Shown: positions 6,440-64,000, counted from the first letter of the stretch. The stretch is DNA of 64,000 bases from Lepidodermella squamata (GCA_047495785.1 JBLDXI010000066.1:124001-188000); one strand, 5' to 3'. Program-made: numbers and translations. Notes: a model not told the origin generated them from the sequence alone.

Positions 6440-6496
6440 CAAGACTTGTTTTGGCGTTTCATTCTTCTTCATTTTACTTGGTTAATGAGGATAATA

Positions 6497-6863: not shown

Positions 6864-7247
6864 TATCGCCGTCTTAGGCTTTGCTGGCGAATAGCCCAAC
6901 AAACGCAGATTTTGTCGCAAACAATTTGTGCCGTCTCGAATGGCGTAAAAGACCTAAGACGGTGTTCGGAGAAATGCTTTATTTTTTGGAGAATCTCAAT
7001 GCTAAAATGTTTAACAAAAATATGGGACTGTCGGAGTAAAATACGCCACCACTCGTGCCCTCCTAATTTTTTGCAATTTTCTGCGTGCGCTCCAGGTTGA
7101 AAGAGACTGCCCCCAACTGTTACGTGGATAAAAGCTCCACGCGTGTCATGGCGGGATAGTTGCAAAAGAAGGATAGTATCTTCATTCATATAAAAATTAT
7201 GTTTTAGAGAATTTCTGATTTTTTTTCGAAATTTCGAGAATTTCTGA

Positions 7248-7789: not shown

Positions 7790-7790
7790 G

Positions 7791-29125: not shown

Positions 29126-29391
29126 AAATAACGCGTACTTATTTAAGTACGAATATCAAAAAATGCGTACTTATTTAAGTATGAATATCAAAAAACGCGT
29201 ACTTATTTAAGTACGAATATCCACTCCGAAAAAATTACAACACTTTATTTTAATTAGGCGTACTTAAGCTTCTTTTTAATATGAATTTTAATTTTAATTT
29301 TCCATAAATGAAAATTATAATATTTAAGGCTGTAAGACTCTGGCGAAAGAAAATACCAAGTTTAAGCTATAAAATGTTTTATTGTCATCTC

Positions 29392-38866: not shown

Positions 38867-39110
38867 TTTGAAAATAAAAGAAATAATAATATGGCTAACA
38901 AACCACAGGATTATTCATCATAAGGCAAAAAAAACAGTAGGCTCTGGCATTTCGAGCGTCATTCCTTTGTCTCGAGCAAACAAAGGCTTAATGGAATACC
39001 TATAGGGTTACACTCTGCTGGTTATGAATCACGTATTACGCCATAACCAACGTATGAATCTTACTACTGGAGTACGCATAGTTGTTGTAGACCACGCATT
39101 ACACCTTGGC

Positions 39111-39147
39111 TATAAAACAAGCAGGGCAGTGCAGGTTACGTTCAGTC
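39111..39147 (+). promoter_or_regulatory. TATA box plus initiator for the 39216 gene
   Basis: TATAAAA at 39111 and TCAGTC at 39142, about 31 bp apart, which is canonical spacing. Confidence 0.6.
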
Positions 39148-39215
39148 ATCAAACCTCAGCGATAAACAGTTTTTTACTATACATCATCACCAGCTCAAGC
39201 AAACACTTCTCAGCT

Positions 39216-39602
39216 ATGAACCCGCAAGCGAAAAGCGTCAAATCGGCTAGTCAGACCGACATTCATTCTCAGGTCTCATTCCCGCCAGCTTTCTACCCGT
39301 CGGCTCAGCCCAGCAACAAGAAATGCAGCCGTAAATGCTGTTTCATCGGAACTGCCCTGGGTGTTTTTTTTGGTCTCTTAGTTCTTGGTGTCATAATCTA
39401 CGTTGTCATGGTTGTTGAGTCTCAATGCTACCGTGGTTGCCAGAGAATGTGTACGAGTGACAATCACTGTGTTGACAACTGCTGGAAGGTATGCTGGAAG
39501 GCGCAGTGGACAAAGTGTCCGGAGGATGGCGCCAAGGCATGCTCTTACATTCTTTGGGACAAGGCTGTTATCAATATTGGCGGCCTGTTTGGCAAGAAGT
39601 AA
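39216..39602 (+). CDS. Small intronless single-pass (type II-like) membrane protein with a Cys-rich C-terminus
   Basis: MNPQAK..., juxtamembrane KKCSRKCC, long hydrophobic segment, then a C-terminal domain with 8 Cys; upstream TATA/Inr. Confidence 0.7.
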   Translation: MNPQAKSVKSASQTDIHSQVSFPPAFYPSAQPSNKKCSRKCCFIGTALGVFFGLLVLGVIIYVVMVVESQCYRGCQRMCTSDNHCVDNCWKVCWKAQWTKCPEDGAKACSYILWDKAVINIGGLFGKK

Positions 39603-41220: not shown

Positions 41221-44200
41221 ATGAGATCGTATTTTTCTATTTTATTTCACTCGGGGGTGTTTCTGGCAGCAATAGCGATCGCCAACTGCGAGCGATCGTC
41301 CAAGCGCTGCTACTCCGCCCGAAGCTGTTTCAATTTCAAGGAAACAAGCATGAGGTGTGTACCCAAGAGAGATGGCTGCTCAGCTGATGAAGTTACGGTA
41401 GGGTTTTATTCATGAATAATAATTTTTCTTAGAATATTTGCATTTTTCCCAACTAGACAAACGAGTACACTGGCAATTCATTCAGTGCGGTGTATGACGA
41501 TTGCAAAGCCGATATTAAACGTTTCATGGTTTGTTTTTTGACTTCGTGTTCAATTTTACGGAAATGGGTATATTATTATTTTCTCTATCATAGATTCGAA
41601 AAGCCTATTTGTGCGAAAATGAAAATGGCGCTCGCCTATGCATACCACTCAACGGTACCTGCCCTAACAGCGGGGTGAGTCTTTTATTCACAATTTTTTC
41701 TTAATATCTGTAATTTCTTTGGAAAATTATTGCAATTTCTTTGAAAATAGAAAATTAAGAATAAAGTCTTAACCCTCTTGAATTCTAAATAACCTAAATT
41801 ATCTAAACCTTTCTGAATTATTTTTATTTCACCATTATTTGATCAATTATTCAAAAATTTATTTATTTATTTAATAATTCTGTAACCGTGAGGAATTTTG
41901 TTTTGAGCGATTTTTCACCAGTTTGCGTTAGACTTCCCTGAAATTCTTTAGAATGGGATTTCAGCCAGGGAATCGGTGGCCAAAATGCTTTTTGCGATTT
42001 TTATAACAAACATTCCATCCAATCCCAATAAATTTGAAATAGAATTTGAATTTTTATAAATGAAGTTTTCGGATTTTGGGGTTGGAAAAAGCTTTATCGG
42101 GCCATTTTCTTAAAAGAGAATAGTCAGTGGTTCTTCAACCCCGATTTTCCGGCCCCAAGCGCCCATTTTGGCGGCCGGCATAGGTCTGCTGCCCATCTTC
42201 TGCATTGCGTACAATCGGACGGCTCTTTTGAGGGATTTTCAGAATTTTAAAAGGTTTTAAAGATTCAGGATTTTAGGAAATGTTGCAAATTTCCAACAAT
42301 TTTCTGTGTTATAAATATAGTCACAGTTTTCTCAGATTTCAGTTTTGAAGCTCTCAATATTTTTGGGCAATTTTATCACAGATATAACGCATATGTTTAT
42401 TATCTTCCATCTTTTTATAGAAAACAACAAGAACCTTAGTGGGCTATTTCGTTGATTTTCAAATTTTTTTAAAATAAAACCTTACAAATTTTTCGCTTGA
42501 ATTTCCATGGATGACTCGCTAGGTAATTTATTTCAATATCAATTTTAATATCAATCGATGAATGAATCATTTTTCCGCCATTCAATAACGGCAAAATTGT
42601 CGTCACGTTATTTCCAACAGATGGGAATTCAGGGTTGAATCGAGAATTCAATAGATCTCGAGATACTGTTCCAAGATACAAAATCAATTATACATTCAAA
42701 CCTTCGGGTACTTTGAAAATTCTTGCAGCATCCCTGCGGTGATCGGAAGAGGACATTTTTCGAGCCTTACTTCAGTTGAGCTGGTTGAAATTGGTTGAAA
42801 ATGTGATTTCTTACTTGAAAATGCATAATTATTATTAAATAATTTTATTTTTTTAATGTCCTTACAGACATACATACGGACAGTGGCATCGATGCAAGAA
42901 TGTATGCGGGAGCAGAACAGTGAGTTGAGATACCCTTTAATTAGTCATAATTGTCTACTCCTCTCATTCTACGCAGTTGTCGCAAGCGATTTCAAACCGC
43001 ACTACCGCTGTTTTCTGACTAGCGATCTGTCATTTCTCGGCTGCCAAGCGTCAAGATGCGACAGCAATACCGCGACACAGGTAACCCATTGTTCGAGGGA
43101 TGAGTGGGTTTTGAGTAACATGGCATGAATAATTTAGGAACTTAGCCCTGGTACCTATACGGACAAGGCACTTTGCAAAGTTGGCGTGAGTTCATTTCAT
43201 TATCATGAATCAATCTATTCATAAAGCGAATGTAAACTTCAGCCTGCTGCTCTGTGCTCTTCAGCCTATGGTAACACGTGCCGAGGTTCATGCAGCCGGA
43301 CCGGACTAACACTGGTATGAAACGATGAATATGCTGAAATTTTATATCCCTTATTATAAAATAAGGTTATCACGTTTGATGGAAATACCGATTTTGCCGA
43401 TAACTATGCTGACTGTATTGCATCTCTGGTATTTTCAATAAGTATTTTCAATAGAACGACAAATGCATTTTCTTTCATTTTCAGCCTCATATGCAATGCG
43501 TGGATCAAACAACACTCGCGTTCGTCAAATGTCAGCCTCCTGGAACTTCGTGCCCAGCCGGTACTACTGGCAGAAAAACCTTCAACAATTTAAAGGAATG
43601 CTTAACAAGTGAGTTAATTAAAAACTAAAAAGTTTGGATATAAAAAATTACATTAGAAATTGCGCAAAATGGGCTCACGGGGTTGAAATTAACACAATCA
43701 AGAACCAAACTCTCGTGTACGAACTGTGCAGGTCCGAACCAACGATGCCTGCCGGGCAACACGTGTACATGCGTGGCTCCTGCGAAGCAATCATGCCACC
43801 CGCCCAACAAATGCAACATTTGGGTCATCCGGCCTCTCTGCCAATTCGCAACCTGCAACGCTATTCGCCATCGAGATGACTGCGTAATCAGCGAAACTGA
43901 GCCAGATCCCGAGTTGAAGCAAGACTTCCACTGGAAGAAGATCAGTGGCCTGACAGGCAGTTGCATTTCGTTTGAATCCGTCAACAAGCCGAACTTTGTC
44001 CTGCGTCACTCAAACTTTAAGCTGTTTCTTACGTGGTACGATGGCAATCAGGGGCTTGCTGCTGATGCGACGTTCTGCGAAAGGCAGCTGGGTTCCGGCA
44101 TTGGCTACGAATCTGTTAACTATCCCGGCTACTTCATTCACGTCGATGCCAACAACGAACTCTTCATTCGCCAGAATGCAACGTCGTTGAATTTTCCCTC

Positions 44201-47200
44201 GCGCTCAACCTTCCAAGAAACGGCTTTGGGTAAGTTGCCGGAGATTTAGCTTTCGCATACTGATTGTTTTCTTTTCATAAAACAGCCGTCTGTACCGACT
44301 GCGGTGGCGAAAACCAGCAATGCCAGGAGAACAACAAGTGCACGTGCAAGCCTGGATGGGAAGGCCACGGGTGTAACACACCGATAGGTAGGCTGCGTTT
44401 TGTTACTTGAATACCTCGACGGATCGCCAGAGCCTAGAAGGACAATTTCTGTGAAATTCTTGATTATGGGGGTTTGGTAAATTTTGAAATGCTGATTTGT
44501 TGGCGAAATTCCAAAATTAATTGAACATGAATTCAGTCATAGTTTCCGTAGCGAAAAATCCACTATTATTATTTTCTGCATTTTACTGCTGAATTCGTAC
44601 GCATTTAATGAGATGAAAAACCGGGAAAACCCTAGGGAAATGATGTATCGCGTTCAAATGAAGGACGCCAAAATCACACCTTACCTCGGCGCTTACTAAC
44701 ATTTTGTTTGTAATGTACAGCCTCGTGTAAAAATTGCACTAGTCCGAACCAACGATGCCTGCCGGGCAACACGTGTACATGCGTGGCTCCTGCGAAGCAA
44801 TCATGCCACCCGCCCAACAAATGCAACATTTGGGTCATCCGGCCTCTCTGCCAATTCGCAACCTGCAACGCTATTCGCCATCGAGATGACTGCGTAATCA
44901 GCGAAACTGAGCCAGATCCCGAGTTGAAGCAAGACTTCCACTGGAAGAAGATCAGTGGCCTGACAGGCAGTTGCATTTCGTTTGAATCCGTCAACAAGCC
45001 GAACTTTGTCCTGCGTCACTCAAACTTTAAGCTGTTTCTTACGTGGTACGATGGCAATCAGGGGATTGCTGCTGATGCGACGTTCTGCGAAAAGCAGCTG
45101 GGTTCCGGCATTGGCTACGAATCTGTTAACTATCCCGGCTACTTCATTCACGTCGATGCCAACAACGAACTCTTCATTCGCCAGAATGCAACGTCGTTGA
45201 GTTTTCCCTCGCGCTCAACCTTCCAAGAAACGGCTTTGGGTAAGTTGCCGGAGATTTAGCTTTCGCATACTGATTGTTTTCTTTTCATAAAACAGCCGTC
45301 TGTACCGACTGCGGTGGCGAAAACCAGCAATGCCTGGAGAACAACAAGTGCACGTGCAAGCCTGGATGGGAAGGCCACGGGTGTAACACACCGATAGGTA
45401 GGCTGCGTTTTGTTACTTGAATACCTCGACGGATCGCCAGAGCCTAGAAGGACAATTTCTGTGAAATTCTTGATTATGGGGGTTTGGTAAATTTTGAAAT
45501 GCTGATTTGTTGGCGAAATTCCAAAATTAATTGAACATGAATTCAGTCATAGTTTCGGTAGCAAAAATTCCACTATTATTATTTTCTGCATTTTACTGCT
45601 GAATTCGTACGCATTTAATGAGATGAAAAACCGGGAAAACCCTAGGGAAATGATGTATCGCGTTCAAATGAAGGACGCCAAAATCACACCTTACCTCGGC
45701 GTTTACTAACATTTTGTTTGTATTGAACAGCCTCGTGTAAAAATTGCACTAGTCCGAACCAACGATGCCTGCCGGGCAACACGTGTACATGCGTGGCTAT
45801 TGCGAAGCAATCATGCCACCCGCCCAACAAATGCAACATTTGGGTCATCCGGCCTCTCTGCCAATTCGCAACCTGCAACGCTATTCGCCATCGAGATGAC
45901 TGCGTAATCAGCGAAACTGAGCCAGATCCCGAGTTGAAGCAAGACTTCCACTGGAAGAAGATCAGTGGCCTGACAGGCAGTTGCATTTCGTTTGAATCCG
46001 TCAACAAGCCGAACTTTGTCCTGCGTCACTCAAACTTTAAGCTGTTTCTTACGTGGTACGATGGCAATCAGGGGCTTGCTGCTGATGCGACGTTCTGCGA
46101 AAAGCAGCTGGGTTCCGGCATTGGCTACGAATCTGTTAACTATCCCGGCTACTTCATTCACGTCGATGCCAACAACGAACTCTTCATTCGCCAGAATGCA
46201 ACGTCGTTGAATTTTCCCTCGCGCTCAACCTTCCAAGAAACGGCTTTGGGTAAGTTGCCGGAGATTTAGCTTTCGCATACTGATTGTTTTCTTTTCATAA
46301 AACAGCCGTCTGTACCGACTGCGGTGGCGAAAACCAGCAATGCCTGGAGAACAACAAGTGCACGTGCAAGCCTGGATGGGAAGGCCACGGGTGTAACACA
46401 CCGATAGGTAGGCTGCGTTTTGTTACTTGAATACCTCGACGGATCGCCAGAGCCTAGAAGGACAATTTCTGTGAAATTCTTGATTATGGGGGTTTGGTAA
46501 ATTTTGAAATGCTGATTTGTTGGCGAAATTCCAAAATTAATTGAACATGAATTCAGTCATAGTTTCGGTAGCAAAAAATCCACTATTATTATTTTCTGCA
46601 TTTTACTGCTGAATTCGTACGCATTTAATGAGATGAAAAACCGGGAAAACCCTAGGGAAATGATGTATCGCGTTCAAATGAAGGACGCCAAAATCACACC
46701 TTACCTCGGCGTTTACTAACATTTTGTTTGTAATGTACAGCCTCGTGTAAAAATTGCACTAGTCCGAACCAACGATGCCTGCCGGGCAACACGTGTACAT
46801 GCGTGGCTCCTGCGAAGCAATCATGCCACCCGCCCAACAAATGCAACATTTGGGTCATCCGGCCTCTCTGCCAATTCGCAACCTGCAACGCTATTCGCCA
46901 TCGAGATGACTGCGTAATCAGCGAAACTGAGCCAGATCCCGAGTTGAAGCAAGACTTCCACTGGAAGAAGATCAGTGGCCTGACAGGCAGTTGCATTTCG
47001 TTTGAATCCGTCAACAAGCCGAACTTTGTCCTGCGTCACTCAAACTTTAAGCTGTTTCTTACGTGGTACGATGGCAATCAGGGGCTTGCTGCTGATGCGA
47101 CGTTCTGCGAAAAGCAGCTGGGTTCCGGCATTGGCTACGAATCTGTTAACTATCCCGGCTACTTCATTCACGTCGATGCCAACAACGAACTCTTCATTCG

Positions 47201-50200
47201 CCAGAATGCAACGTCGTTGAATTTTCCCTCGCGCTCAACCTTCCAAGAAACGGCTTTGGGTAAGTTGCCGGAGATTTAGCTTTCGCATACTGATTGTTTT
47301 CTTTTCATAAAACAGCCGTCTGTACCGACTGCGGTGGCGAAAACCAGCAATGCCAGGAGAACAACAAGTGCACGTGCAAGCCTGGATGGGAAGGCCACGG
47401 GTGTAACACACCGATAGGTAGGCTGCGTTTTGTTACTTGAATACCTCGACGGATCGCCAGAGCCTAGAAGGACAATTTCTGTGAAATTCTTGATTATGGG
47501 GGTTTGGTAAATTTTGAAATGCTGATTTGTTGGCGAAATTCCAAAATTAATTGAACATGAATTCAGTCATAGTTTCGGTAGCAAAAAATCCACTATTATT
47601 ATTTTCTGCATTTTACTGCTGAATTCGTACGCATTTAATGAGATGAAAAACCGGGAAAACCCTAGGGAAATGATGTATCGCGTTCAAATGAAGGACGCCA
47701 AAATCACACCTTACCTCGGCGTTTACTAACATTTTGTTTGTAATGTACAGCCTCGTGTAAAAATTGCACTAGTCCGAACCAACGATGCCTGCCGGGCAAC
47801 ACGTGTACATGCGTGGCTCCTGCGAAGCAATCATGCCACCCGCCCAACAAATGCAACATTTGGGTCATCCGGCCTCTCTGCCAATTCGCAACCTGCAACG
47901 CTATTCGCCATCGAGATGACTGCGTAATCAGCGAAACTGAGCCAGATCCCGAGTTGAAGCAAGACTTCCACTGGAAGAAGATCAGTGGCCTGACAGGCAG
48001 TTGCATTTCGTTTGAATCCGTCAACAAGCCGAACTTTGTCCTGCGTCACTCAAACTTTAAGCTGTTTCTTACGTGGTACGATGGCAATCAGGGGCTTGCT
48101 GCTGATGCGACGTTCTGCGAAAGGCAGCTGGGTTCCGGCATTGGCTACGAATCTGTTAACTATCCCGGCTACTTCATTCACGTCGATGCCAACAACGAAC
48201 TCTTCATTCGCCAGAATGCAACGTCGTTGAGTTTTCCCTCGCGCTCAACCTTCCAAGAAACGGCTTTGGGTAAGTTGCCGGAGATTTAGCTTTCGCATAC
48301 TGATTGTTTTCTTTTCATAAAACAGCCGTCTGTACCGACTGCGGTGGCGAAAACCAGCAATGCCAGGAGAACAACAAGTGCACGTGCAAGCCTGGATGGG
48401 AAGGCCACGGGTGTAACACACCGATAGGTAGGCTGCGTTTTGTTACTTGAATACCTCGACGGATCGCCAGAGCCTAGAAGGACAATTTCTGTGAAATTCT
48501 TGATTATGGGGGTTTGGTAAATTTTGAAATGCTGATTTGTTGGCGAAATTCCAAAATTAATTGAACATGAATTCAGTCATAGTTTCGGTAGCAAAAAATC
48601 CACTATTATTATTTTCTGCATTTTACTGCTGAATTCGTACGCATTTAATGAGATGAAAAACCGGGAAAACCCTAGGGAAATGATGTATCGCGTTCAAATG
48701 AAGGACGCCAAAATCACACCTTACCTCGGCGTTTACTAACATTTTGTTTGTAATGTACAGCCTCGTGTAAAAATTGCACTAGTCCGAACCAACGATGCCT
48801 GCCGGGCAACACGTGTACATGCGTGGCTCCTGCGAAGCAATCATGCCACCCGCCCAACAAATGCAACATTTGGGTCATCCGGCCTCTCTGCCAATTCGCA
48901 ACCTGCAACGCTATTCGCCATCGAGATGACTGCGTAATCAGCGAAACTGAGCCAGATCCCGAGTTGAAGCAAGACTTCCACTGGAAGAAGATCAGTGGCC
49001 TGACAGGCAGTTGCATTTCGTTTGAATCCGTCAACAAGCCGAACTTTGTCCTGCGTCACTCAAACTTTAAGCTGTTTCTTACGTGGTACGATGGCAATCA
49101 GGGGCTTGCTGCTGATGCGACGTTCTGCGAAAAGCAGCTGGGTTCCGGCATTGGCTACGAATCTGTTAACTATCCCGGCTACTTCATTCACGTCGATGCC
49201 AACAACGAACTCTTCATTCGCCAGAATGCAACGTCGTTGAATTTTCCCTCGCGCTCAACCTTCCAAGAAACGGCTTTGGGTAAGTTGCCGGAGATTTAGC
49301 TTTCGCATACTGATTGTTTTCTTTTCATAAAACAGCCGTCTGTACCGACTGCGGTGGCGAAAACCAGCAATGCCAGGAGAACAACAAGTGCACGTGCAAG
49401 CCTGGATGGGAAGGCCACGGGTGTAACACACCGATAGGTAGGCTGCGTTTTGTTACTTGAATACCTCGACGGATCGCCAGAGCCTAGAAGGACAATTTCT
49501 GTGAAATTCTTGATTATGGGGGTTTGGTAAATTTTGAAATGCTGATTTGTTGGCGAAATTCCAAAATTAATTGAACATGAATTCAGTCATAGTTTCGGTA
49601 GCAAAAAATCCACTATTATTATTTTCTGCATTTTACTGCTGAATTCGTACGCATTTAATGAGATGAAAAACCGGGAAAACCCTAGGGAAATGATGTATCG
49701 CGTTCAAATGAAGGACGCCAAAATCACACCTTACCTCGGCGTTTACTAACATTTTGTTTGTAATGTACAGCCTCGTGTAAAAATTGCACTAGTCCGAACC
49801 AACGATGCCTGCCGGGCAACACGTGTACATGCGTGGCTCCTGCGAAGCAATCATGCCACCCGCCCAACAAATGCAACATTTGGGTCATCCGGCCTCTCTG
49901 CCAATTCGCAACCTGCAACGCTATTCGCCATCGAGATGACTGCGTAATCAGCGAAACTGAGCCAGATCCCGAGTTGAAGCAAGACTTCCACTGGAAGAAG
50001 ATCAGTGGCCTGACAGGCAGTTGCATTTCGTTTGAATCCGTCAACAAGCCGAACTTTGTCCTGCGTCACTCAAACTTTAAGCTGTTTCTTACGTGGTACG
50101 ATGGCAATCAGGGGCTTGCTGCTGATGCGACGTTCTGCGAAAAGCAGCTGGGTTCCGGCATTGGCTACGAATCTGTTAACTATCCCGGCTACTTCATTCA

Positions 50201-53200
50201 CGTCGATGCCAACAACGAACTCTTCATTCGCCAGAATGCAACGTCGTTGAATTTTCCCTCGCGCTCAACCTTCCAAGAAACGGCTTTGGGTAAGTTGCCG
50301 GAGATTTAGCTTTCGCATACTGATTGTTTTCTTTTCATAAAACAGCCGTCTGTACCGACTGCGGTGGCGAAAACCAGCAATGCCAGGAGAACAACAAGTG
50401 CACGTGCAAGCCTGGATGGGAAGGCCACGGGTGTAACACACCGATAGGTAGGCTGCGTTTTGTTACTTGAATACCTCGACGGATCGCCAGAGCCTAGAAG
50501 GACAATTTCTGTGAAATTCTTGATTATGGGGGTTTGGTAAATTTTGAAATGCTGATTTGTTGGCGAAATTCCAAAATTAATTGAACATGAATTCAGTCAT
50601 AGTTTCGGTAGCAAAAAATCCACTATTATTATTTTCTGCATTTTACTGCTGAATTCGTACGCATTTAATGAGATGAAAAACCGGGAAAACCCTAGGGAAA
50701 TGATGTATCGCGTTCAAATGAAGGACGCCAAAATCACACCTTACCTCGGCGTTTACTAACATTTTGTTTGTAATGTACAGCCTCGTGTAAAAATTGCACT
50801 AGTCCGAACCAACGATGCCTGCCGGGCAACACGTGTACATGCGTGGCTCCTGCGAAGCAATCATGCCACCCGCCCAACAAATGCAACATTTGGGTCATCC
50901 GGCCTCTCTGCCAATTCGCAACCTGCAACGCTATTCGCCATCGAGATGACTGCGTAATCAGCGAAACTGAGCCAGATCCCGAGTTGAAGCAAGACTTCCA
51001 CTGGAAGAAGATCAGTGGCCTGACAGGCAGTTGCATTTCGTTTGAATCCGTCAACAAGCCGAACTTTGTCCTGCGTCACTCAAACTTTAAGCTGTTTCTT
51101 ACGTGGTACGATGGCAATCAGGGGCTTGCTGCTGATGCGACGTTCTGCGAAAAGCAGCTGGGTTCCGGCATTGGCTACGAATCTGTTAACTATCCCGGCT
51201 ACTTCATTCACGTCGATGCCAACAACGAACTCTTCATTCGCCAGAATGCAACGTCGTTGAATTTTCCCTCGCGCTCAACCTTCCAAGAAACGGCTTTGGG
51301 TAAGTTGCCGGAGATTTAGCTTTCGCATACTGATTGTTTTCTTTTCATAAAACAGCCGTCTGTACCGACTGCGGTGGCGAAAACCAGCAATGCCAGGAGA
51401 ACAACAAGTGCACGTGCAAGCCTGGATGGGAAGGCCACGGGTGTAACACACCGATAGGTAGGCTGCGTTTTGTTACTTGAATACCTCGACGGATCGCCAG
51501 AGCCTAGAAGGACAATTTCTGTGAAATTCTTGATTATGGGGGTTTGGTAAATTTTGAAATGCTGATTTGTTGGCGAAATTCCAAAATTAATTGAACATGA
51601 ATTCAGTCATAGTTTCGGTAGCAAAAATTCCACTATTATTATTTTCTGCATTTTACTGCTGAATTCGTACGCATTTAATGAGATGAAAAACCGGGAAAAC
51701 CCTAGGGAAATGATGTATCGCGTTCAAATGAAGGACGCCAAAATCACACCTTACCTCGGCGTTTACTAACATTTTGTTTGTATTGAACAGCCTCGTGTAA
51801 AAATTGCACTAGTCCGAACCAACGATGCCTGCCGGGCAACACGTGTACATGCGTGGCTATTGCGAAGCAATCATGCCACCCGCCCAACAAATGCAACATT
51901 TGGGTCATCCGGCCTCTCTGCCAATTCGCAACCTGCAACGCTATTCGCCATCGAGATGACTGCGTAATCAGCGAAACTGAGCCAGATCCCGAGTTGAAGC
52001 AAGACTTCCACTGGAAGAAGATCAGTGGCCTGACAGGCAGTTGCATTTCGTTTGAATCCGTCAACAAGCCGAACTTTGTCCTGCGTCACTCAAACTTTAA
52101 GCTGTTTCTTACGTGGTACGATGGCAATCAGGGGCTCGCTGCTGATGCGACGTTCTGCGAAAGGCAGCTGGGTTCCGGCATTGGCTACGAATCTGTCAAC
52201 TATCCCGGCTACTTCATTCACGTCGATGCCAACAACGAACTCTTCATTCGCCAGAATGCAACGTCGTTGAATTTTCCCTCGCGCTCAACCTTCCAAGAAA
52301 CGGCTTTGGGTAAGTTGCCGGAGATTTAGCTTTCGCATACTGATTGTTTTCTTTTCATAAAACAGCCGTCTGTACCGACTGCGGTGGCGAAAACCAGCAA
52401 TGCCAGGAGAACAACAAGTGCACGTGCAAGCCTGGATGGGAAGGCCACGGGTGTAACACACCGATAGGTAGGCTGCGTTTTGTTACTTGAATACCTCGAC
52501 GGATCGCCAGAGCCTAGAAGGACAATTTCTGTGAAATTCTTGATTATGGGGGTTTGGTAAATTTTGAAATGCTGATTTGTTGGCGAAATTCCAAAATTAA
52601 TTGAACATGAATTCAGTCATAGTTTCCGTAGCGAAAAATCCACTATTATTATTTTCTGCATTTTACTGCTGAATTCGTACGCATTTAATGAGATGAAAAA
52701 CCGGGAAAACCCTAGGGAAATGATGTATCGCGTTCAAATGAAGGACGCCAAAATCACACCTTACCTCGGCGTTTACTAACATTTTGTTTGTAATGTACAG
52801 CCTCGTGTAAAAATTGCACTAGTCCGAACCAACGATGCCTGCCGGGCAACACGTGTACATGCGTGGCTCCTGCGAAGCAATCATGCCACCCGCCCAACAA
52901 ATGCAACATTTGGGTCATCCGGCCTCTCTGCCAATTCGCAACCTGCAACGCTATTCGCCATCGAGATGACTGCGTAATCAGCGAAACTGAGCCAGATCCC
53001 GAGTTGAAGCAAGACTTCCACTGGAAGAAGATCAGTGGCCTGACAGGCAGTTGCATTTCGTTTGAATCCGTCAACAAGCCGAACTTTGTCCTGCGTCACT
53101 CAAACTTTAAGCTGTTTCTTACGTGGTACGATGGCAATCAGGGGCTTGCTGCTGATGCGACGTTCTGCGAAAAGCAGCTGGGTTCCGGCATTGGCTACGA

Positions 53201-56200
53201 ATCTGTTAACTATCCCGGCTACTTCATTCACGTCGATGCCAACAACGAACTCTTCATTCGCCAGAATGCAACGTCGTTGAATTTTCCCTCGCGCTCAACC
53301 TTCCAAGAAACGGCTTTGGGTAAGTTGCCGGAGATTTAGCTTTCGCATACTGATTGTTTTCTTTTCATAAAACAGCCGTCTGTACCGACTGCGGTGGCGA
53401 AAACCAGCAATGCCAGGAGAACAACAAGTGCACGTGCAAGCCTGGATGGGAAGGCCACGGGTGTAACACACCGATAGGTAGGCTGCGTTTTGTTACTTGA
53501 ATACCTCGACGGATCGCCAGAGCCTAGAAGGACAATTTCTGTGAAATTCTTGATTATGGGGGTTTGGTAAATTTTGAAATGCTGATTTGTTGGCGAAATT
53601 CCAAAATTAATTGAACATGAATTCAGTCATAGTTTCGGTAGCAAAAAATCCACTATTATTATTTTCTGCATTTTACTGCTGAATTCGTACGCATTTAATG
53701 AGATGAAAAACCGGGAAAACCCTAGGGAAATGATGTATCGCGTTCAAATGAAGGACGCCAAAATCACACCTTACCTCGGCGTTTACTAACATTTTGTTTG
53801 TATTGAACAGCCTCGTGTAAAAATTGCACTAGTCCGAACCAACGATGCCTGCCGGGCAACACGTGTACATGCGTGGCTATTGCGAAGCAATCATGCCACC
53901 CGCCCAACAAATGCAACATTTGGGTCATCCGGCCTCTCTGCCAATTCGCAACCTGCAACGCTATTCGCCATCGAGATGACTGCGTAATCAGCGAAACTGA
54001 GCCAGATCCCGAGTTGAAGCAAGACTTCCACTGGAAGAAGATCAGTGGCCTGACAGGCAGTTGCATTTCGTTTGAATCCGTCAACAAGCCGAACTTTGTC
54101 CTGCGTCACTCAAACTTTAAGCTGTTTCTTACGTGGTACGATGGCAATCAGGGGCTCGCTGCTGATGCGACGTTCTGCGAAAGGCAGCTGGGTTCCGGCA
54201 TTGGCTACGAATCTGTCAACTATCCCGGCTACTTCATTCACGTCGATGCCAACAACGAACTCTTCATTCGCCAGAATGCAACGTCGTTGAATTTTCCCTC
54301 GCGCTCAACCTTCCAAGAAACGGCTTTGGGTAAGTTGCCGGAGATTTAGCTTTCGCATACTGATTGTTTTCTTTTCATAAAACAGCCGTCTGTACCGACT
54401 GCGGTGGCGAAAACCAGCAATGCCAGGAGAACAACAAGTGCACGTGCAAGCCTGGATGGGAAGGCCACGGGTGTAACACACCGATAGGTAGGCTGCGTTT
54501 TGTTACTTGAATACCTCGACGGATCGCCAGAGCCTAGAAGGACAATTTCTGTGAAATTCTTGATTATGGGGGTTTGGTAAATTTTGAAATGCTGATTTGT
54601 TGGCGAAATTCCAAAATTAATTGAACATGAATTCAGTCATAGTTTCCGTAGCGAAAAATCCACTATTATTATTTTCTGCATTTTACTGCTGAATTCGTAC
54701 GCATTTAATGAGATGAAAAACCGGGAAAACCCTAGGGAAATGATGTATCGCGTTCAAATGAAGGACGCCAAAATCACACCTTACCTCGGCGCTTACTAAC
54801 ATTTTGTTTGTAATGTACAGCCTCGTGTAAAAATTGCACTAGTCCGAACCAACGATGCCTGCCGGGCAACACGTGTACATGCGTGGCTCCTGCGAAGCAA
54901 TCATGCCACCCGCCCAACAAATGCAACATTTGGGTCATCCGGCCTCTCTGCCAATTCGCAACCTGCAACGCTATTCGCCATCGAGATGACTGCGTAATCA
55001 GCGAAACTGAGCCAGATCCCGAGTTGAAGCAAGACTTCCACTGGAAGAAGATCAGTGGCCTGACAGGCAGTTGCATTTCGTTTGAATCCGTCAACAAGCC
55101 GAACTTTGTCCTGCGTCACTCAAACTTTAAGCTGTTTCTTACGTGGTACGATGGCAATCAGGGGCTTGCTGCTGATGCGACGTTCTGCGAAAAGCAGCTG
55201 GGTTCCGGCATTGGCTACGAATCTGTTAACTATCCCGGCTACTTCATTCACGTCGATGCCAACAACGAACTCTTCATTCGCCAGAATGCAACGTCGTTGA
55301 ATTTTCCCTCGCGCTCAACCTTCCAAGAAACGGCTTTGGGTAAGTTGCCGGAGATTTAGCTTTCGCATACTGATTGTTTTCTTTTCATAAAACAGCCGTC
55401 TGTACCGACTGCGGTGGCGAAAACCAGCAATGCCAGGAGAACAACAAGTGCACGTGCAAGCCTGGATGGGAAGGCCACGGGTGTAACACACCGATAGGTA
55501 GGCTGCGTTTTGTTACTTGAATACCTCGACGGATCGCCAGAGCCTAGAAGGACAATTTCTGTGAAATTCTTGATTATGGGGGTTTGGTAAATTTTGAAAT
55601 GCTGATTTGTTGGCGAAATTCCAAAATTAATTGAACATGAATTCAGTCATAGTTTCGGTAGCAAAAATTCCACTATTATTATTTTCTGCATTTTACTGCT
55701 GAATTCGTACGCATTTAATGAGATGAAAAACCGGGAAAACCCTAGGGAAATGATGTATCGCGTTCAAATGAAGGACGCCAAAATCACACCTTACCTCGGC
55801 GCTTACTAACATTTTGTTTGTAATGTACAGCCTCGTGTAAAAATTGCACTAGTCCGAACCAACGATGCCTGCCGGGCAACACGTGTACATGCGTGGCTAT
55901 TGCGAAGCAATCATGCCACCCGCCCAACAAATGCAACATTTGGGTCATCCGGCCTCTCTGCCAATTCGCAACCTGCAACGCTATTCGCCATCGAGATGAC
56001 TGCGTAATCAGCGAAACTGAGCCAGATCCCGAGTTGAAGCAAGACTTCCACTGGAAGAAGATCAGTGGCCTGACAGGCAGTTGCATTTCGTTTGAATCCG
56101 TCAACAAGCCGAACTTTGTCCTGCGTCACTCAAACTTTAAGCTGTTTCTTACGTGGTACGATGGCAATCAGGGGCTCGCTGCTGATGCGACGTTCTGCGA

Positions 56201-59200
56201 AAGGCAGCTGGGTTCCGGCATTGGCTACGAATCTGTCAACTATCCCGGCTACTTCATTCACGTCGATGCCAACAACGAACTCTTCATTCGCCAGAATGCA
56301 ACGTCGTTGAATTTTCCCTCGCGCTCAACCTTCCAAGAAACGGCTTTGGGTAAGTTGCCGGAGATTTAGCTTTCGCATACTGATTGTTTTCTTTTCATAA
56401 AACAGCCGTCTGTACCGACTGCGGTGGCGAAAACCAGCAATGCCAGGAGAACAACAAGTGCACGTGCAAGCCTGGATGGGAAGGCCACGGGTGTAACACA
56501 CCGATAGGTAGGCTGCGTTTTGTTACTTGAATACCTCGACGGATCGCCAGAGCCTAGAAGGACAATTTCTGTGAAATTCTTGATTATGGGGGTTTGGTAA
56601 ATTTTGAAATGCTGATTTGTTGGCGAAATTCCAAAATTAATTGAACATGAATTCAGTCATAGTTTCCGTAGCGAAAAATCCACTATTATTATTTTCTGCA
56701 TTTTACTGCTGAATTCGTACGCATTTAATGAGATGAAAAACCGGGAAAACCCTAGGGAAATGATGTATCGCGTTCAAATGAAGGACGCCAAAATCACACC
56801 TTACCTCGGCGCTTACTAACATTTTGTTTGTAATGTACAGCCTCGTGTAAAAATTGCACTAGTCCGAACCAACGATGCCTGCCGGGCAACACGTGTACAT
56901 GCGTGGCTCCTGCGAAGCAATCATGCCACCCGCCCAACAAATGCAACATTTGGGTCATCCGGCCTCTCTGCCAATTCGCAACCTGCAACGCTATTCGCCA
57001 TCGAGATGACTGCGTAATCAGCGAAACTGAGCCAGATCCCGAGTTGAAGCAAGACTTCCACTGGAAGAAGATCAGTGGCCTGACAGGCAGTTGCATTTCG
57101 TTTGAATCCGTCAACAAGCCGAACTTTGTCCTGCGTCACTCAAACTTTAAGCTGTTTCTTACGTGGTACGATGGCAATCAGGGGATTGCTGCTGATGCGA
57201 CGTTCTGCGAAAAGCAGCTGGGTTCCGGCATTGGCTACGAATCTGTTAACTATCCCGGCTACTTCATTCACGTCGATGCCAACAACGAACTCTTCATTCG
57301 CCAGAATGCAACGTCGTTGAGTTTTCCCTCGCGCTCAACCTTCCAAGAAACGGCTTTGGGTAAGTTGCCGGAGATTTAGCTTTCGCATACTGATTGTTTT
57401 CTTTTCATAAAACAGCCGTCTGTACCGACTGCGGTGGCGAAAACCAGCAATGCCTGGAGAACAACAAGTGCACGTGCAAGCCTGGATGGGAAGGCCACGG
57501 GTGTAACACACCGATAGGTAGGCTGCGTTTTGTTACTTGAATACCTCGACGGATCGCCAGAGCCTAGAAGGACAATTTCTGTGAAATTCTTGATTATGGG
57601 GGTTTGGTAAATTTTGAAATGCTGATTTGTTGGCGAAATTCCAAAATTAATTGAACATGAATTCAGTCATAGTTTCGGTAGCAAAAATTCCACTATTATT
57701 ATTTTCTGCATTTTACTGCTGAATTCGTACGCATTTAATGAGATGAAAAACCGGGAAAACCCTAGGGAAATGATGTATCGCGTTCAAATGAAGGACGCCA
57801 AAATCACACCTTACCTCGGCGTTTACTAACATTTTGTTTGTATTGAACAGCCTCGTGTAAAAATTGCACTAGTCCGAACCAACGATGCCTGCCGGGCAAC
57901 ACGTGTACATGCGTGGCTATTGCGAAGCAATCATGCCACCCGCCCAACAAATGCAACATTTGGGTCATCCGGCCTCTCTGCCAATTCGCAACCTGCAACG
58001 CTATTCGCCATCGAGATGACTGCGTAATCAGCGAAACTGAGCCAGATCCCGAGTTGAAGCAAGACTTCCACTGGAAGAAGATCAGTGGCCTGACAGGCAG
58101 TTGCATTTCGTTTGAATCCGTCAACAAGCCGAACTTTGTCCTGCGTCACTCAAACTTTAAGCTGTTTCTTACGTGGTACGATGGCAATCAGGGGCTCGCT
58201 GCTGATGCGACGTTCTGCGAAAGGCAGCTGGGTTCCGGCATTGGCTACGAATCTGTCAACTATCCCGGCTACTTCATTCACGTCGATGCCAACAACGAAC
58301 TCTTCATTCGCCAGAATGCAACGTCGTTGAATTTTCCCTCGCGCTCAACCTTCCAAGAAACGGCTTTGGGTAAGTTGCCGGAGATTTAGCTTTCGCATAC
58401 TGATTGTTTTCTTTTCATAAAACAGCCGTCTGTACCGACTGCGGTGGCGAAAACCAGCAATGCCAGGAGAACAACAAGTGCACGTGCAAGCCTGGATGGG
58501 AAGGCCACGGGTGTAACACACCGATAGGTAGGCTGCGTTTTGTTACTTGAATACCTCGACGGATCGCCAGAGCCTAGAAGGACAATTTCTGTGAAATTCT
58601 TGATTATGGGGGTTTGGTAAATTTTGAAATGCTGATTTGTTGGCGAAATTCCAAAATTAATTGAACATGAATTCAGTCATAGTTTCGGTAGCAAAAATTC
58701 CACTATTATTATTTTCTGCATTTTACTGCTGAATTCGTACGCATTTAATGAGATGAAAAACCGGGAAAACCCTAGGGAAATGATGTATCGCGTTCAAATG
58801 AAGGACGCCAAAATCACACCTTACCTCGGCGTTTACTAACATTTTGTTTGTATTGAACAGCCTCGTGTAAAAATTGCACTAGTCCGAACCAACGATGCCT
58901 GCCGGGCAACACGTGTACATGCGTGGCTCCTGCGAAGCAATCATGCCACCCGCCCAACAAATGCAACATTTGGGTCATCCGGCCTCTCTGCCAATTCGCA
59001 ACCTGCAACGCTATTCGCCATCGAGATGACTGCGTAATCAGCGAAACTGAGCCAGATCCCGAGTTGAAGCAAGACTTCCACTGGAAGAAGATCAGTGGCC
59101 TGACAGGCAGTTGCATTTCGTTTGAATCCGTCAACAAGCCGAACTTTGTCCTGCGTCACTCAAACTTTAAGCTGTTTCTTACGTGGTACGATGGCAATCA

Positions 59201-62200
59201 GGGGATTGCTGCTGATGCGACGTTCTGCGAAAAGCAGCTGGGTTCCGGCATTGGCTACGAATCTGTTAACTATCCCGGCTACTTCATTCACGTCGATGCC
59301 AACAACGAACTCTTCATTCGCCAGAATGCAACGTCGTTGAGTTTTCCCTCGCGCTCAACCTTCCAAGAAACGGCTTTGGGTAAGTTGCCGGAGATTTAGC
59401 TTTCGCATACTGATTGTTTTCTTTTCATAAAACAGCCGTCTGTACCGACTGCGGTGGCGAAAACCAGCAATGCCAGGAGAACAACAAGTGCACGTGCAAG
59501 CCTGGATGGGAAGGCCACGGGTGTAACACACCGATAGGTAGGCTGCGTTTTGTTACTTGAATACCTCGACGGATCGCCAGAGCCTAGAAGGACAATTTCT
59601 GTGAAATTCTTGATTATGGGGGTTTGGTAAATTTTGAAATGCTGATTTGTTGGCGAAATTCCAAAATTAATTGAACATGAATTCAGTCATAGTTTCCGTA
59701 GCGAAAAATCCACTATTATTATTTTCTGCATTTTACTGCTGAATTCGTACGCATTAAATGAGATGAAAAACCGGGAAAACCCTAGGGAAATGATGTATCG
59801 CGTTCAAATGAAGGACGCCAAAATCACACCTTACCTCGGCGCTTACTAACATTTTGTTTGTAATGTACAGCCTCGTGTAAAAATTGCACTAGTCCGAACC
59901 AACGATGCCTGCCGGGCAACACGTGTACATGCGTGGCTCCTGCGAAGCAATCATGCCACCCGCCCAACAAATGCAACATTTGGGTCATCCGGCCTCTCTG
60001 CCAATTCGCAACCTGCAACGCTATTCGCCATCGAGATGACTGCGTAATCAGCGAAACTGAGCCAGATCCCGAGTTGAAGCAAGACTTCCACTGGAAGAAG
60101 ATCAGTGGCCTGACAGGCAGTTGCATTTCGTTTGAATCCGTCAACAAGCCGAACTTTGTCCTGCGTCACTCAAACTTTAAGCTGTTTCTTACGTGGTACG
60201 ATGGCAATCAGGGGCTTGCTGCTGATGCGACGTTCTGCGAAAGGCAGCTGGGTTCCGGCATTGGCTACGAATCTGTTAACTATCCCGGCTACTTCATTCA
60301 CGTCGATGCCAACAACGAACTCTTCATTCGCCAGAATGCAACGTCGTTGAGTTTTCCCTCGCGCTCAACCTTCCAAGAAACGGCTTTGGGTAAGTTGCCG
60401 GAGATTTAGCTTTCGCATACTGATTGTTTTCTTTTCATAAAACAGCCGTCTGTACCGACTGCGGTGGCGAAAACCAGCAATGCCAGGAGAACAACAAGTG
60501 CACGTGCAAGCCTGGATGGGAAGGCCACGGGTGTAACACACCGATAGGTAGGCTGCGTTTTGTTACTTGAATACCTCGACGGATCGCCAGAGCCTAGAAG
60601 GACAATTTCTGTGAAATTCTTGATTATGGGGGTTTGGTAAATTTTGAAATGCTGATTTGTTGGCGAAATTCCAAAATTAATTGAACATGAATTCAGTCAT
60701 AGTTTCCGTAGCGAAAAATCCACTATTATTATTTTCTGCATTTTACTGCTGAATTCGTACGCATTAAATGAGATGAAAAACCGGGAAAACCCTAGGGAAA
60801 TGATGTATCGCGTTCAAATGAAGGACGCCAAAATCACACCTTACCTCGGCGCTTACTAACATTTTGTTTGTAATGTACAGCCTCGTGTAAAAATTGCACT
60901 AGTCCGAACCAACGATGCCTGCCGGGCAACACGTGTACATGCGTGGCTCCTGCGAAGCAATCATGCCACCCGCCCAACAAATGCAACATTTGGGTCATCC
61001 GGCCTCTCTGCCAATTCGCAACCTGCAACGCTATTCGCCATCGAGATGACTGCGTAATCAGCGAAACTGAGCCAGATCCCGAGTTGAAGCAAGACTTCCA
61101 CTGGAAGAAGATCAGTGGCCTGACAGGCAGTTGCATTTCGTTTGAATCCGTCAACAAGCCGAACTTTGTCCTGCGTCACTCAAACTTTAAGCTGTTTCTT
61201 ACGTGGTACGATGGCAATCAGGGGATTGCTGCTGATGCGACGTTCTGCGAAAAGCAGCTGGGTTCCGGCATTGGCTACGAATCTGTTAACTATCCCGGCT
61301 ACTTCATTCACGTCGATGCCAACAACGAACTCTTCATTCGCCAGAATGCAACGTCGTTGAGTTTTCCCTCGCGCTCAACCTTCCAAGAAACGGCTTTGGG
61401 TAAGTTGCCGGAGATTTAGCTTTCGCATACTGATTGTTTTCTTTTCATAAAACAGCCGTCTGTACCGACTGCGGTGGCGAAAACCAGCAATGCCTGGAGA
61501 ACAACAAGTGCACGTGCAAGCCTGGATGGGAAGGCCACGGGTGTAACACACCGATAGGTAGGCTGCGTTTTGTTACTTGAATACCTCGACGGATCGCCAG
61601 AGCCTAGAAGGACAATTTCTGTGAAATTCTTGATTATGGGGGTTTGGTAAATTTTGAAATGCTGATTTGTTGGCGAAATTCCAAAATTAATTGAACATGA
61701 ATTCAGTCATAGTTTCGGTAGCAAAAATTCCACTATTATTATTTTCTGCATTTTACTGCTGAATTCGTACGCATTTAATGAGATGAAAAACCGGGAAAAC
61801 CCTAGGGAAATGATGTATCGCGTTCAAATGAAGGACGCCAAAATCACACCTTACCTCGGCGTTTACTAACATTTTGTTTGTATTGAACAGCCTCGTGTAA
61901 AAATTGCACTAGTCCGAACCAACGATGCCTGCCGGGCAACACGTGTACATGCGTGGCTATTGCGAAGCAATCATGCCACCCGCCCAACAAATGCAACATT
62001 TGGGTCATCCGGCCTCTCTGCCAATTCGCAACCTGCAACGCTATTCGCCATCGAGATGACTGCGTAATCAGCGAAACTGAGCCAGATCCCGAGTTGAAGC
62101 AAGACTTCCACTGGAAGAAGATCAGTGGCCTGACAGGCAGTTGCATTTCGTTTGAATCCGTCAACAAGCCGAACTTTGTCCTGCGTCACTCAAACTTTAA

Positions 62201-62572
62201 GCTGTTTCTTACGTGGTACGATGGCAATCAGGGGCTTGCTGCTGATGCGACGTTCTGCGAAAGGCAGCTGGGTTCCGGCATTGGCTACGAATCTGTTAAC
62301 TATCCCGGCTACTTCATTCACGTCGATGCCAACAACGAACTCTTCATTCGCCAGAATGCAACGTCGTTGAGTTTTCCCTCGCGCTCAACCTTCCAAGAAA
62401 CGGCTTTGGGTAAGTTGCCGGAGATTTAGCTTTCGCATACTGATTGTTTTCTTTTCATAAAACAGCCGTCTGTACCGACTGCGGTGGCGAAAACCAGCAA
62501 TGCCTGGAGAACAACAAGTGCACGTGCAAGCCTGGATGGGAAGGGCATAGGTGCACTAAACGCTGTATTTAA
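41221..62572 (+). CDS. Giant secreted protein (~4,200 aa predicted): signal peptide, five 4-Cys modules, then 19 x [EGF-like, AbfB/CBM42, EGF]
   Basis: N-terminal exons are homologous to the 7791 gene. Each unit has a 519-nt exon, 56-nt intron, 102-nt exon and 333-nt intron, all junctions phase 1 and no stops. The last exon diverges to GWEGHRCTKRCI* (stop 62570-62572), with AATAAA at about 62673. Confidence 0.85.
43712..62543 (+). repeat. Intragenic tandem array, 1010-bp period, 19 coding units, differing only at a few recurrent sites
   Basis: ORF stops recur every 1010 bp from 44249 to 62429. Confidence 0.98.
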
Positions 62573-63142
62573 GTTGAAAGAAACCAGAGTTGTGACAATT
62601 GCATCAAATGCTACAATGACATTATGTATTCATTGAAATTAAAACCAAAGTTGTCGATATGTTATATTTACCAATAAAACGTTACAATGCATCGTCTGAC
62701 TTATATCTGCTTTTGTCTTTTGCTGCAATTTCGAATTTTACATCAATTACTTAGCAAAATAAAACTGCGAATAATCTGCCCAATATGCCGTTCTTCGTCG
62801 CGAACTCTCCGCCCCAACAAGGATTGAGGCTCAGAAGGATAAGGGAACATTCTTACAGTAATTTCGGCCTTGCATAGGGCAGTGGTTATCCGTTCCCAGC
62901 TGCGCAATTTCAAGTCTGCAGCTTTTCAGAGCTTTCCAGAGCTTTCATTTTGAACTTCGGTTCGACATGTCAGTGTTGAAATTGCGGACGTGGATGCGTG
63001 AAGAAAAAACTCATCCCTCTTTACTACAATCTATATATATGAATATATGATCTATCGAATGAAGCTATGGCTAATGGTTGTCGCTTGTCGCATGCACATT
63101 ACCCCCTGTGGCAAACATCAAGGCAAACATACATCAACGTCT

Positions 63143-63189
63143 GTAGCCTGTAGCCTGTAGCCTGTAGCCTGTAGTCCTGTAGCCTGTAG
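63143..63189. repeat. (GTAGCCT)n heptamer microsatellite
   Basis: tgtagcctgtagcctgtagcctgtagcctgtag... Confidence 0.85.
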
Positions 63190-63883: not shown

Positions 63884-64000
63884 ATGAACTCGTATTTTTC
63901 AATTACATTTTATTCGGCGGCGATTCTATCAGCGATAGCGATCACCGACTCACTGCAAGCATACAAACGCTGCTTCTCCAGATTCAATGATACGTTCACT
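63884..64000 (+). CDS. Start (exon 1, partial) of another member of the Cys-rich/EGF/AbfB family
   Basis: MNSYFSITFYSAAILSAIAITDSLQAYKRCFSRFNDTFT, homologous to MRSYFSTLFYSAVMLSAVVANTNSQQTYKRCFSRFNDNFS. Confidence 0.8.
   Translation, partial: MNSYFSITFYSAAILSAIAITDSLQAYKRCFSRFNDTFT

What the first reader, a model, noticed from the sequence alone, without database searches (positions are those of the whole stretch)
41221..62572. Giant multivalent AbfB/CBM42-EGF secreted protein with 19 tandem sugar-binding-type beta-trefoils
Seen: the 1010-bp array is coding. Each unit (519+102 nt exons, 207 aa, all phase 1) splices in frame from a signal-peptide N-terminus to a unique terminal stop, giving about 4,200 aa. 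The repeated domain carries SFESVNKPNFVLRH...DATF and YESVNYPGYFIH, the hallmark of the AbfB/CBM42 beta-trefoil. Established: CBM42 binds arabinofuranose side chains in fungal and bacterial arabinofuranosidases; in animals AbfB is mostly known as isolated domains in otogelin-type proteins. Inference: a non-catalytic, high-avidity lectin or scaffold (EGF spacers plus many binding modules). It might capture arabinosylated algal, plant or microbial glycans (food, symbiont or pathogen recognition) or cross-link mucus or adhesive. I do not know of a described animal protein with this architecture.
Basis: partly seen in the sequence, partly recalled or inferred. Interest (0 to 1): 0.9.

Follow-up and report, generated by a model that had tools for sequence, protein, structure and literature searches.

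The report
Giant 19-repeat sugar-binding secreted protein
A small invertebrate carries an intact gene for a very large secreted protein made of 19 almost identical, recently copied microbial-type sugar-binding modules, probably a many-armed glycan-gripping glue or trap, although whether it is expressed and what it binds are untested.

Summary
A 45-exon model (41221-62572, +) reads open for 4,171 aa: signal peptide, unrecognised Cys-rich head, then 19 units of EGF-like/AbfB(CBM42)/EGF. Pfam, PDB and an AlphaFold model confirm the CBM42 beta-trefoil. No catalytic or membrane domain. Each unit has one canonical arabinofuranose-type pocket, one atypical pocket and one probably dead pocket. The units are 98.6-100% identical, introns included, with recombined shared variants and a two-unit rhythm: a very recent unequal-crossover expansion, not an obvious assembly error. 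An intact 991-aa paralog in the window (two AbfB, 12 EGF) gives dN/dS of 0.27-0.40, so the module was under purifying selection; selection on the 19-fold count is not shown. No RNA run holds the gene. Horizontal transfer is not shown. The scan earlier noted AbfB exons in other gene families of this genome and more family members downstream, but not this array elsewhere. The host is probably the gastrotrich Lepidodermella (circumstantial). Verdict: new variant of a known kind.

The parts
41221..41397 (+). Exon 1: ATG, signal peptide (about residues 1-21), start of Cys-rich head; an in-frame fusion of the paralog's exons 1 and 3
   Evidence: hydrophobic peak at residue 7; blastn halves match 7790-7888 and 8113-8211
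41594..43608 (+). Exons 2-7 (41594-41674, 42868-42919, 42977-43080, 43138-43185, 43243-43314, 43485-43608): unrecognised Cys-rich head shared with paralogs
   Evidence: no Pfam match for the five head exons scanned and no Atlas hit for exon 7; 71% identical to paralog, dN/dS 0.28
43657..44229 (+). Exon 8: unit 1 EGF-like + AbfB/CBM42 exon with an 18-residue lead-in (own acceptor absent)
44286..44387 (+). Exon 9: unit 1 six-Cys EGF exon
44721..45239 (+). Representative 519-nt exon (unit 2): 7-Cys EGF-like lead (residues 1-35) + AbfB/CBM42 beta-trefoil (about 36-172); repeats every 1010 bp to 61891-62409
45296..45397 (+). Representative 102-nt EGF exon (unit 2); repeats every 1010 bp to 61456-61557
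43720..62545 (+). Whole tandem array, 19 x 1010 bp, 98.6-100% identity between units 2-18, 15 variable sites, no indels
62466..62572 (+). Exon 45: last EGF with diverged 3' end, donor lost, one extra Cys two residues before the stop
62673..62763 (+). Two AATAAA polyadenylation-signal-like hexamers
7791..16693 (+). Intact 23-exon paralog, 991 aa: signal peptide, Cys-rich head, 8 EGF, AbfB (14990-15511), 4 EGF, AbfB (16170-16693), stop
63884..64000 (+). Start (signal-peptide exon) of a further paralog running off the window

Best explanation
A real, lineage-specific gene for a secreted, non-enzymatic, many-valent lectin or cross-linker of about 460 kDa. An ancestral gene like the 991-aa paralog (head, EGFs, AbfB, EGFs, AbfB) had a symmetrical phase-1 cassette (EGF-like+AbfB exon, EGF exon). 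That cassette was amplified very recently by unequal crossing-over with conversion to 19 copies (shown by sequence). Each trefoil folds as CBM42 (model) and keeps one canonical His-x-Asn-aromatic...Asp pocket plus a possible second (shown by alignment). Disulfide-bonded EGF spacers would hold the trefoils as beads on a stiff string (inferred). Weak single-site binding to furanose- or pentose-type glycan ends would become high avidity, so the protein would cross-link or capture glycans outside the cell: in glue, cuticle coat or mucus, or on microbes and algae (inferred; ligand and tissue not shown).
For: Open 45-exon frame with canonical splice sites. Pfam AbfB; best PDB match is the Aspergillus AbfB CBM42 (E 4e-14). 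AF2 pLDDT 86; Foldseek's top 19 hits are all CBM42 or its parent enzymes, TM 0.85-0.88 to isolated CBM42. Beta pocket H99, N101, F102, D118 matches the H/Y/D contacts of a ligand-bound CBM42 (PMC12493170). dN/dS 0.27-0.40 against the paralog's AbfB exons, 0.13 for EGF, 0.28 for the head. Array variants are all shared (no singletons), 59 of 105 site pairs fail the four-gamete test, even lags are closer than odd lags, and end units diverge. The DNA run gives an exact 11.7-kb flank contig and collapsed unit contigs at far higher depth. Precedent: Hydra AbfB proteins in basal-disc cells (PMC5080974).
Against: No RNA run holds the stretch, although earlier scan notes report other genes of this genome as transcribed. 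Within the array, 6 of 8 exonic variants are non-synonymous, about the neutral ratio, so there is no sign of selection since amplification (tiny numbers). The gamma-pocket Asp is Arg in all three window domains, and the alpha pocket lacks the aromatic residue. No animal AbfB domain has a measured ligand in the papers I found. The AF2 fold leans on an alignment of AbfB homologues.
Confidence: 0.58

Rival explanations
1. Runaway but neutral amplification. A once-functional two-exon cassette expanded like a satellite in a duplication-prone genome. The gene is silent, barely expressed or spliced down to a few units (all array exons are phase 1-1 and skippable), and the copies are too young to have collected stops.
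For: Introns are as identical as exons, with no indels anywhere. Neutral-looking N:S of 6:2 among unit variants. No RNA holder. The same window holds a near-perfect 3,027-bp triplication that yields truncated copies of the paralog's 5' exons.
Against: The head, terminal exon, stop and polyA signals are intact. Several gene-specific changes look protein-driven: an in-frame loss of one Cys module with gain of a new Cys (20 Cys in the head against 22 in the paralog), two new Cys in the trefoil, and a more canonical beta pocket than the paralog's.
Confidence: 0.2
2. The protein is made, but its trefoils are structural or bind a non-arabinose partner (host glycans, sulfated glycosaminoglycans or protein), like otogelin's AbfB or Hydra PPOD trefoils in an extracellular matrix.
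For: One or two of the three pockets are degenerate, and the paralog's domains keep different pockets. Beta-trefoils are promiscuous; Hydra PPOD trefoils bind sulfated glycans in the cuticle (PMC3531485). Animals are not known to make arabinofuranosides (own knowledge).
Against: The exact H-x-N-F...D(+19) spacing of the arabinofuranose pocket is kept at about 30% overall identity to CBM42.
Confidence: 0.15
3. The copy number is an assembly or amplification artefact and the true gene has far fewer units.
For: The array (about 19 kb) is longer than the mean HiFi read (13.4 kb) of the probable source data, which came from MDA-amplified DNA (PMC11660948; the link to this window is circumstantial). 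No laid contig spans the array. The DNA run is probably the assembly's own source.
Against: Twelve distinct unit haplotypes among 17, built from shared multi-site blocks with two-unit periodicity and no singleton errors. Unit contigs have mean depth 1281-1469 against 59 for the unique flank (about 22-25 fold; the tool warns this is not a copy number), which points to many copies rather than few.
Confidence: 0.07

Closest known systems
CBM42 / Pfam AbfB (PF05270) modules of Aspergillus kawachii AbfB (GH54; 1WD3), Streptomyces SaAraf43A (3AKF), Acetivibrio thermocellus CBM42A and AtAbf43C (3KMV, 9NXH)
   Same: Beta-trefoil fold, FESV...RH...DATF signature, beta-pocket His/Asp, the Cys pair flanking the beta subdomain, and one dead pocket (also usual in CBM42; PMC12493170).
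   Different: No glycoside hydrolase domain; 19 copies instead of 1-5; EGF spacers; intron-containing animal gene; gamma pocket dead, whereas it is intact in most homologues (126 of 146).
Tandem-AbfB secreted proteins of Hydra (310 and 588 aa basal-disc adhesive candidates, PMC5080974; P0031), Clytia (P0023, three near-identical domains), Clavelina (P0022, four), Hydractinia
   Same: Animal, non-catalytic where I scanned (P0022, P0031), several AbfB domains in a row; Clytia and Clavelina begin with signal-peptide-like sequences; Clytia also shows homogenised repeats.
   Different: At most four domains, no EGF motif, no Cys-rich head, about 19-28% identity to this unit, and they keep the gamma pocket.
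Otogelin / otogelin-like (vertebrate ECM proteins with AbfB among VWD-C8-TIL units; PMC4948705)
   Same: Large secreted animal protein containing AbfB.
   Different: No VWD, C8, TIL, mucin or cystine-knot region here; AbfB is the repeated core, not an insertion.
Hydra PPOD cuticle lectins (PMC3531485) and multi-lectin adhesive proteins such as sea urchin Nectin (six galactose-binding domains; cited in PMC5080974)
   Same: Works-like analogy: tandem lectin domains giving multivalent cross-linking of extracellular glycans.
   Different: Different domain families (fascin-like trefoil, galactose-binding); much lower valency.

Membership tests
CBM42 / AbfB domain (each unit) | Sequence match above the Pfam PF05270 cut-off | tested here: met
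   72 bits against 22.8; profile positions 13-136 of 137
CBM42 / AbfB domain (each unit) | Beta-trefoil fold closest to solved CBM42 structures | tested here: met
   AF2 pLDDT 86; Foldseek ranks 1-19 are CBM42, E 4e-11 to 1e-8, next fold 6e-6
CBM42 / AbfB domain (each unit) | At least one pocket with His, aromatic and Asp ligand residues | tested here: met
   Beta pocket H99/N101/F102/D118
CBM42 / AbfB domain (each unit) | Second and third pockets intact | tested here: inconclusive
   Alpha keeps H53 and D71 but has Asp at the aromatic position; gamma has Arg164 for Asp and Val or His (register ambiguous) at the His position. Loss of one pocket is common in the family.
CBM42 / AbfB domain (each unit) | Binds arabinofuranose side chains | not testable with these tools
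   Needs a binding assay
GH54/GH43 alpha-L-arabinofuranosidase (enzyme) | Catalytic GH54 or GH43 domain in the same chain | tested here: not met
   Scanned exons match only AbfB or EGF or nothing; PDB matches cover only the CBM42 part; unscanned head exons are 16-17 residues
Otogelin / gel-forming mucin-like proteins | VWD-C8-TIL units, PTS region, cystine knot | tested here: not met
   None in any exon; Ser+Thr only 9-15%
Cnidarian/tunicate tandem-AbfB proteins | AbfB-only architecture | tested here: not met
   EGF exons and a Cys-rich head are present here; no EGF motif in the 168 homologues retrieved
Cnidarian/tunicate tandem-AbfB proteins | Common descent of the AbfB domain within animals | tested here: inconclusive
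   The free tree keeps the window domains as their own clade (100) beside a bacterial protein (89, not significant), but a single animal clade is not rejected (p-AU 0.52)
EGF-like domain (teneurin/tenascin type) | Six-Cys spacing with CxCxxGWxGxxC and a profile match | tested here: inconclusive
   Spacing is complete; best Pfam EGF_Teneurin E 8e-4, 19.9 bits, below the 24.3 cut-off
Animal adhesive/cuticle lectin cross-linkers | Expression in gland or epidermal cells and presence in the secretion | not testable with these tools
   No RNA run holds the gene

The most novel reading that the evidence does not exclude
This is the high-valency member of an animal family of arabinofuranose-type lectins whose avidity is tuned by cassette number (2 and 19 seen here; 1 and 3 reported next door by an earlier, unchecked note). 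It would let a microscopic animal, probably a gastrotrich, glue to or trap algal, plant or actinobacterial arabinans, which would be a first animal lectin system for a sugar animals are not known to make.
Probability: 0.17. Interest if true: 0.78.

Novelty: new variant of a known kind. Interest (0 to 1): 0.5.

Why it matters
No animal AbfB/CBM42 domain has a measured ligand in the literature I could search, including those of otogelin and the Hydra glue candidates, which were labelled glycosidases although the Hydra AbfB protein I scanned has no catalytic domain. This gene offers a 172-residue unit with a clean canonical pocket that is easy to express, so the question is directly testable. If expressed whole, it would carry about five times more AbfB modules than any animal protein found here and nearly four times more than the best bacterial one retrieved (five). 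It is also a fresh snapshot of an exon cassette being amplified next to its un-amplified paralog. If the host is a gastrotrich, it is a candidate component of an adhesive or cuticle system for which my two paper searches found no molecular study. If silent, it is only an example of runaway tandem duplication.

Tried and rejected
So full-length architecture searches were not run, and the search for homologous proteins saw only 95-300 aa candidates (bacterial or unnamed AbfB proteins, 33-46%). The library search listed only the best 150 of 1,151 hits, so a distant EGF+AbfB protein could be missed. Single-sequence AlphaFold failed (pLDDT 42); the alignment-based run worked. Two metagenome scans (AbfB exon alignment, head exon alignment) found no relative. 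The Atlas gave only generic bacterial AbfB clusters and nothing for the head. A neighbouring carboxypeptidase used to identify the host gave only 29-42% hits across invertebrates and bacteria: no close sequenced relative in that collection, and not human. Paper searches for AbfB+EGF, CBM42+HGT+animal, otogelin+AbfB and gastrotrich adhesive found no description of this architecture; one search was uninformative. Rejected: 19 separate genes (no start, signal or stop inside units); minus-strand 107-aa ORFs (shadows of the repeat); enzyme; membrane receptor (no hydrophobic segment in the unit or last exon); demonstrated horizontal transfer.

Full report
OBSERVATION. A 25-mer from the repeat occurs 19 times at an exact 1010-bp spacing from 43960 to 62140. 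Each period holds a 519-nt exon, a 56-nt intron, a 102-nt exon and a 333-nt intron, all AG/GT, all phase 1, with no stop. Seven short 5' exons from the ATG at 41221 connect in consistent phase. The model has 45 exons, 12,516 nt, 4,171 codons and one stop at 62572, followed by AATAAA at 62673 and 62758. Residues 7-21 are the only strongly hydrophobic stretch among exon 1, the unit and the last exon, so the product looks secreted and not membrane-anchored. From exon masses it would be about 460 kDa (arithmetic). One junction is weak: unit 1 has no acceptor at the array position and must use 43657. All splicing is predicted.

DOMAINS. The long exon matches Pfam AbfB at 72 bits and the CBM42 of Aspergillus AbfB at E 4e-14. 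An alignment-based AlphaFold model has pLDDT 86, and its 19 best Foldseek hits are CBM42 structures. In a ligand-bound CBM42 the beta pocket uses H70, Y73 and D89, the gamma pocket H118, N120, Y121 and D136, and one pocket is often dead (PMC12493170). Here the beta pocket is canonical (H99, N101, F102, D118). The alpha pocket keeps His53 and Asp71 but lacks the aromatic residue. The gamma pocket has Arg for the Asp in this gene and in both paralog domains, against Asp in 130 of 146 homologues. So each unit offers one good and one possible site: 19-38 per chain (inference). The short exon has full six-Cys EGF spacing with sub-threshold teneurin-type matches. The first 35 residues of the long exon are a 7-Cys EGF variant. 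The 219-residue head matches nothing.

HISTORY OF THE ARRAY. Units 2-18 are 98.6-100% identical, introns included, with 15 variable sites and 12 distinct haplotypes. No variant is a singleton, 59 of 105 site pairs show all four gametes, and units two apart differ less (4.2-6.1 sites) than odd neighbours (6.9-8.0). The outer edges of units 1 and 19 diverge, and the last EGF ends like the paralog's EGFs. This is the pattern of recent unequal crossing-over with conversion, including two-unit duplications (inference from established repeat biology). In the one DNA run that holds the stretch, an 11,742-nt contig matches 40900-43761 without a difference and ends at the array, where short collapsed contigs take over. 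Their depths (1281-1469 against 59) point to many copies, but the tool warns that depth is no copy number and the run may be the assembly's own source. No RNA run holds the stretch; this is weak evidence against strong bulk expression.

PARALOGS AND SELECTION. The window holds an intact 23-exon, 991-aa paralog at 7791-16693: same head, eight EGF exons, an AbfB exon, four EGF exons and a terminal AbfB exon. Another starts at 63884. Against the paralog, dN/dS is 0.27 and 0.40 for the AbfB exon, 0.13 for EGF and 0.28 for the head, at dS 0.7-2.2: the modules were coding under purifying selection. Exon 1 of the giant gene is an in-frame fusion of the paralog's exons 1 and 3; it loses three Cys and gains one, which keeps an even count (20 against 22; counted). 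Within the array, six of eight exonic variants change the residue, so selection after amplification is not shown. A 3,027-bp near-perfect direct repeat at 2064-8737 has produced truncated copies of the paralog's 5' exons, so tandem duplication is common here and need not be adaptive.

RELATIVES. The library search gave 1,151 hits, all at 30-50% identity over the AbfB part only, and none of the 168 retrieved has an EGF motif. Named animal hits are AbfB-only proteins from Clavelina (four domains), Clytia (three, near-identical), Hydra and Hydractinia; the largest count is five, in a Maribacter protein. Two Hydra AbfB proteins (310 and 588 aa) are basal-disc-specific candidate adhesive proteins (PMC5080974); otogelin carries AbfB in vertebrates (PMC4948705). 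In a quick tree the three window domains form their own clade, nearest to a bacterial protein without significant support, and a single animal clade is not rejected (p-AU 0.52). The origin is therefore open. Fungal and otogelin rows were not deliberately sampled.

HOST. Unidentified by my own searches. Earlier scan notes suggest the gastrotrich Lepidodermella squamata. The published genome fits loosely: a 2024 study with two organisms, 157 contigs against 147 pieces in this scan, 83x MDA-HiFi, and a second organism of about 100 Mb. That paper reports 1.2-fold higher coverage for GC-rich blocks; the array is 47% GC against 41% for the flank, which would reconcile 19 copies with a 22-25-fold depth. 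This is circumstantial. Other unchecked notes report AbfB exons in mucin-VWA and LamG-EGF-ShK-sushi genes of the same genome and one- and three-module neighbours downstream, so AbfB seems to be a mobile exon in this lineage.

MECHANISM AND VERDICT. Most likely (0.58) the gene encodes a secreted beads-on-a-string lectin: CBM42 trefoils spaced by disulfide-bonded EGF modules, turning weak furanose-type binding into high avidity for cross-linking a glue, coat or mucus or for trapping microbes. Shown: frame, fold, pocket residues, past purifying selection, recent amplification. Inferred: expression, ligand, tissue, and any advantage of 19 copies. Rivals: neutral runaway amplification of a silent or short-spliced gene (0.2), a non-arabinose structural role (0.15), and a copy-number artefact (0.07). 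Each unit is a member of the CBM42/AbfB domain family by sequence, fold and one pocket; the protein is not an arabinofuranosidase, not an otogelin and not an AbfB-only cnidarian-type protein. I found no description of the EGF-AbfB x19 architecture, but its parts and its design principle are familiar: a new variant of a known kind, interest 0.5.

Noticed in passing
window 7791-16693 (+): Intact 991-aa paralog with two AbfB domains and 12 EGF exons; its first AbfB has a canonical alpha pocket and a degenerate beta pocket, the reverse of the giant gene's unit. One GC-AG intron after 14471.
   Followed up: yes
window 2064-8737: Near-perfect 3,027-bp direct repeat giving two truncated upstream copies of the paralog's 5' exons (about 1750-2410 and 4764-5435), each with repeat-element and neprilysin-like fragments.
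   Followed up: partly
window 63884-64000 (+): Signal-peptide exon of another family member running off the window.
   Followed up: partly
window 44066-44098 and 41357-41492 (read laying loose end and joint): Contigs from elsewhere in the same run show at least one further AbfB paralog and a head paralog with a different intron length.
   Followed up: no
window 18334-20082 (-) and 29392-31074 (-): Two long intron-poor M13 (neprilysin-like) peptidase ORFs; the second neighbours a reverse transcriptase ORF at 27983-29116 (-) flanked by 32-bp arrays in inverted orientation (27220-27329, 29125-29221).
   Followed up: no
window 24270-26525 (+) and 33245-35287 (-): Two ANF-receptor ligand-binding (Venus flytrap) ORFs with adjacent long unmatched ORFs, in opposite orientation.
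   Followed up: no
window 35840-36700 (-): Intron-poor M14 carboxypeptidase; best database hits only 29-42% identical.
   Followed up: partly
window 37376-38866 (+): Two-exon secreted PI-PLC-X-domain-like gene (weak Pfam match, E 0.014).
   Followed up: no
window 39024-39602 (+): Small ORF with one hydrophobic segment and a Cys-rich C-terminus, no clear family.
   Followed up: no
window 1-804 (+): 3' end of a gene that reads like a neutral sphingomyelinase (by eye only; no Pfam match for the last ORF).
   Followed up: no
window 9010-9039 and 63141-63189: Short (AACCCT)5 telomere-like run inside a paralog intron, and a (CTGTAGC)7 run downstream of the giant gene.
   Followed up: no
P0031 and PMC5080974: Hydra AbfB proteins are described as glycosidases in the adhesion literature, but the Hydra AbfB protein scanned here has only AbfB domains and no catalytic domain.
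   Followed up: partly
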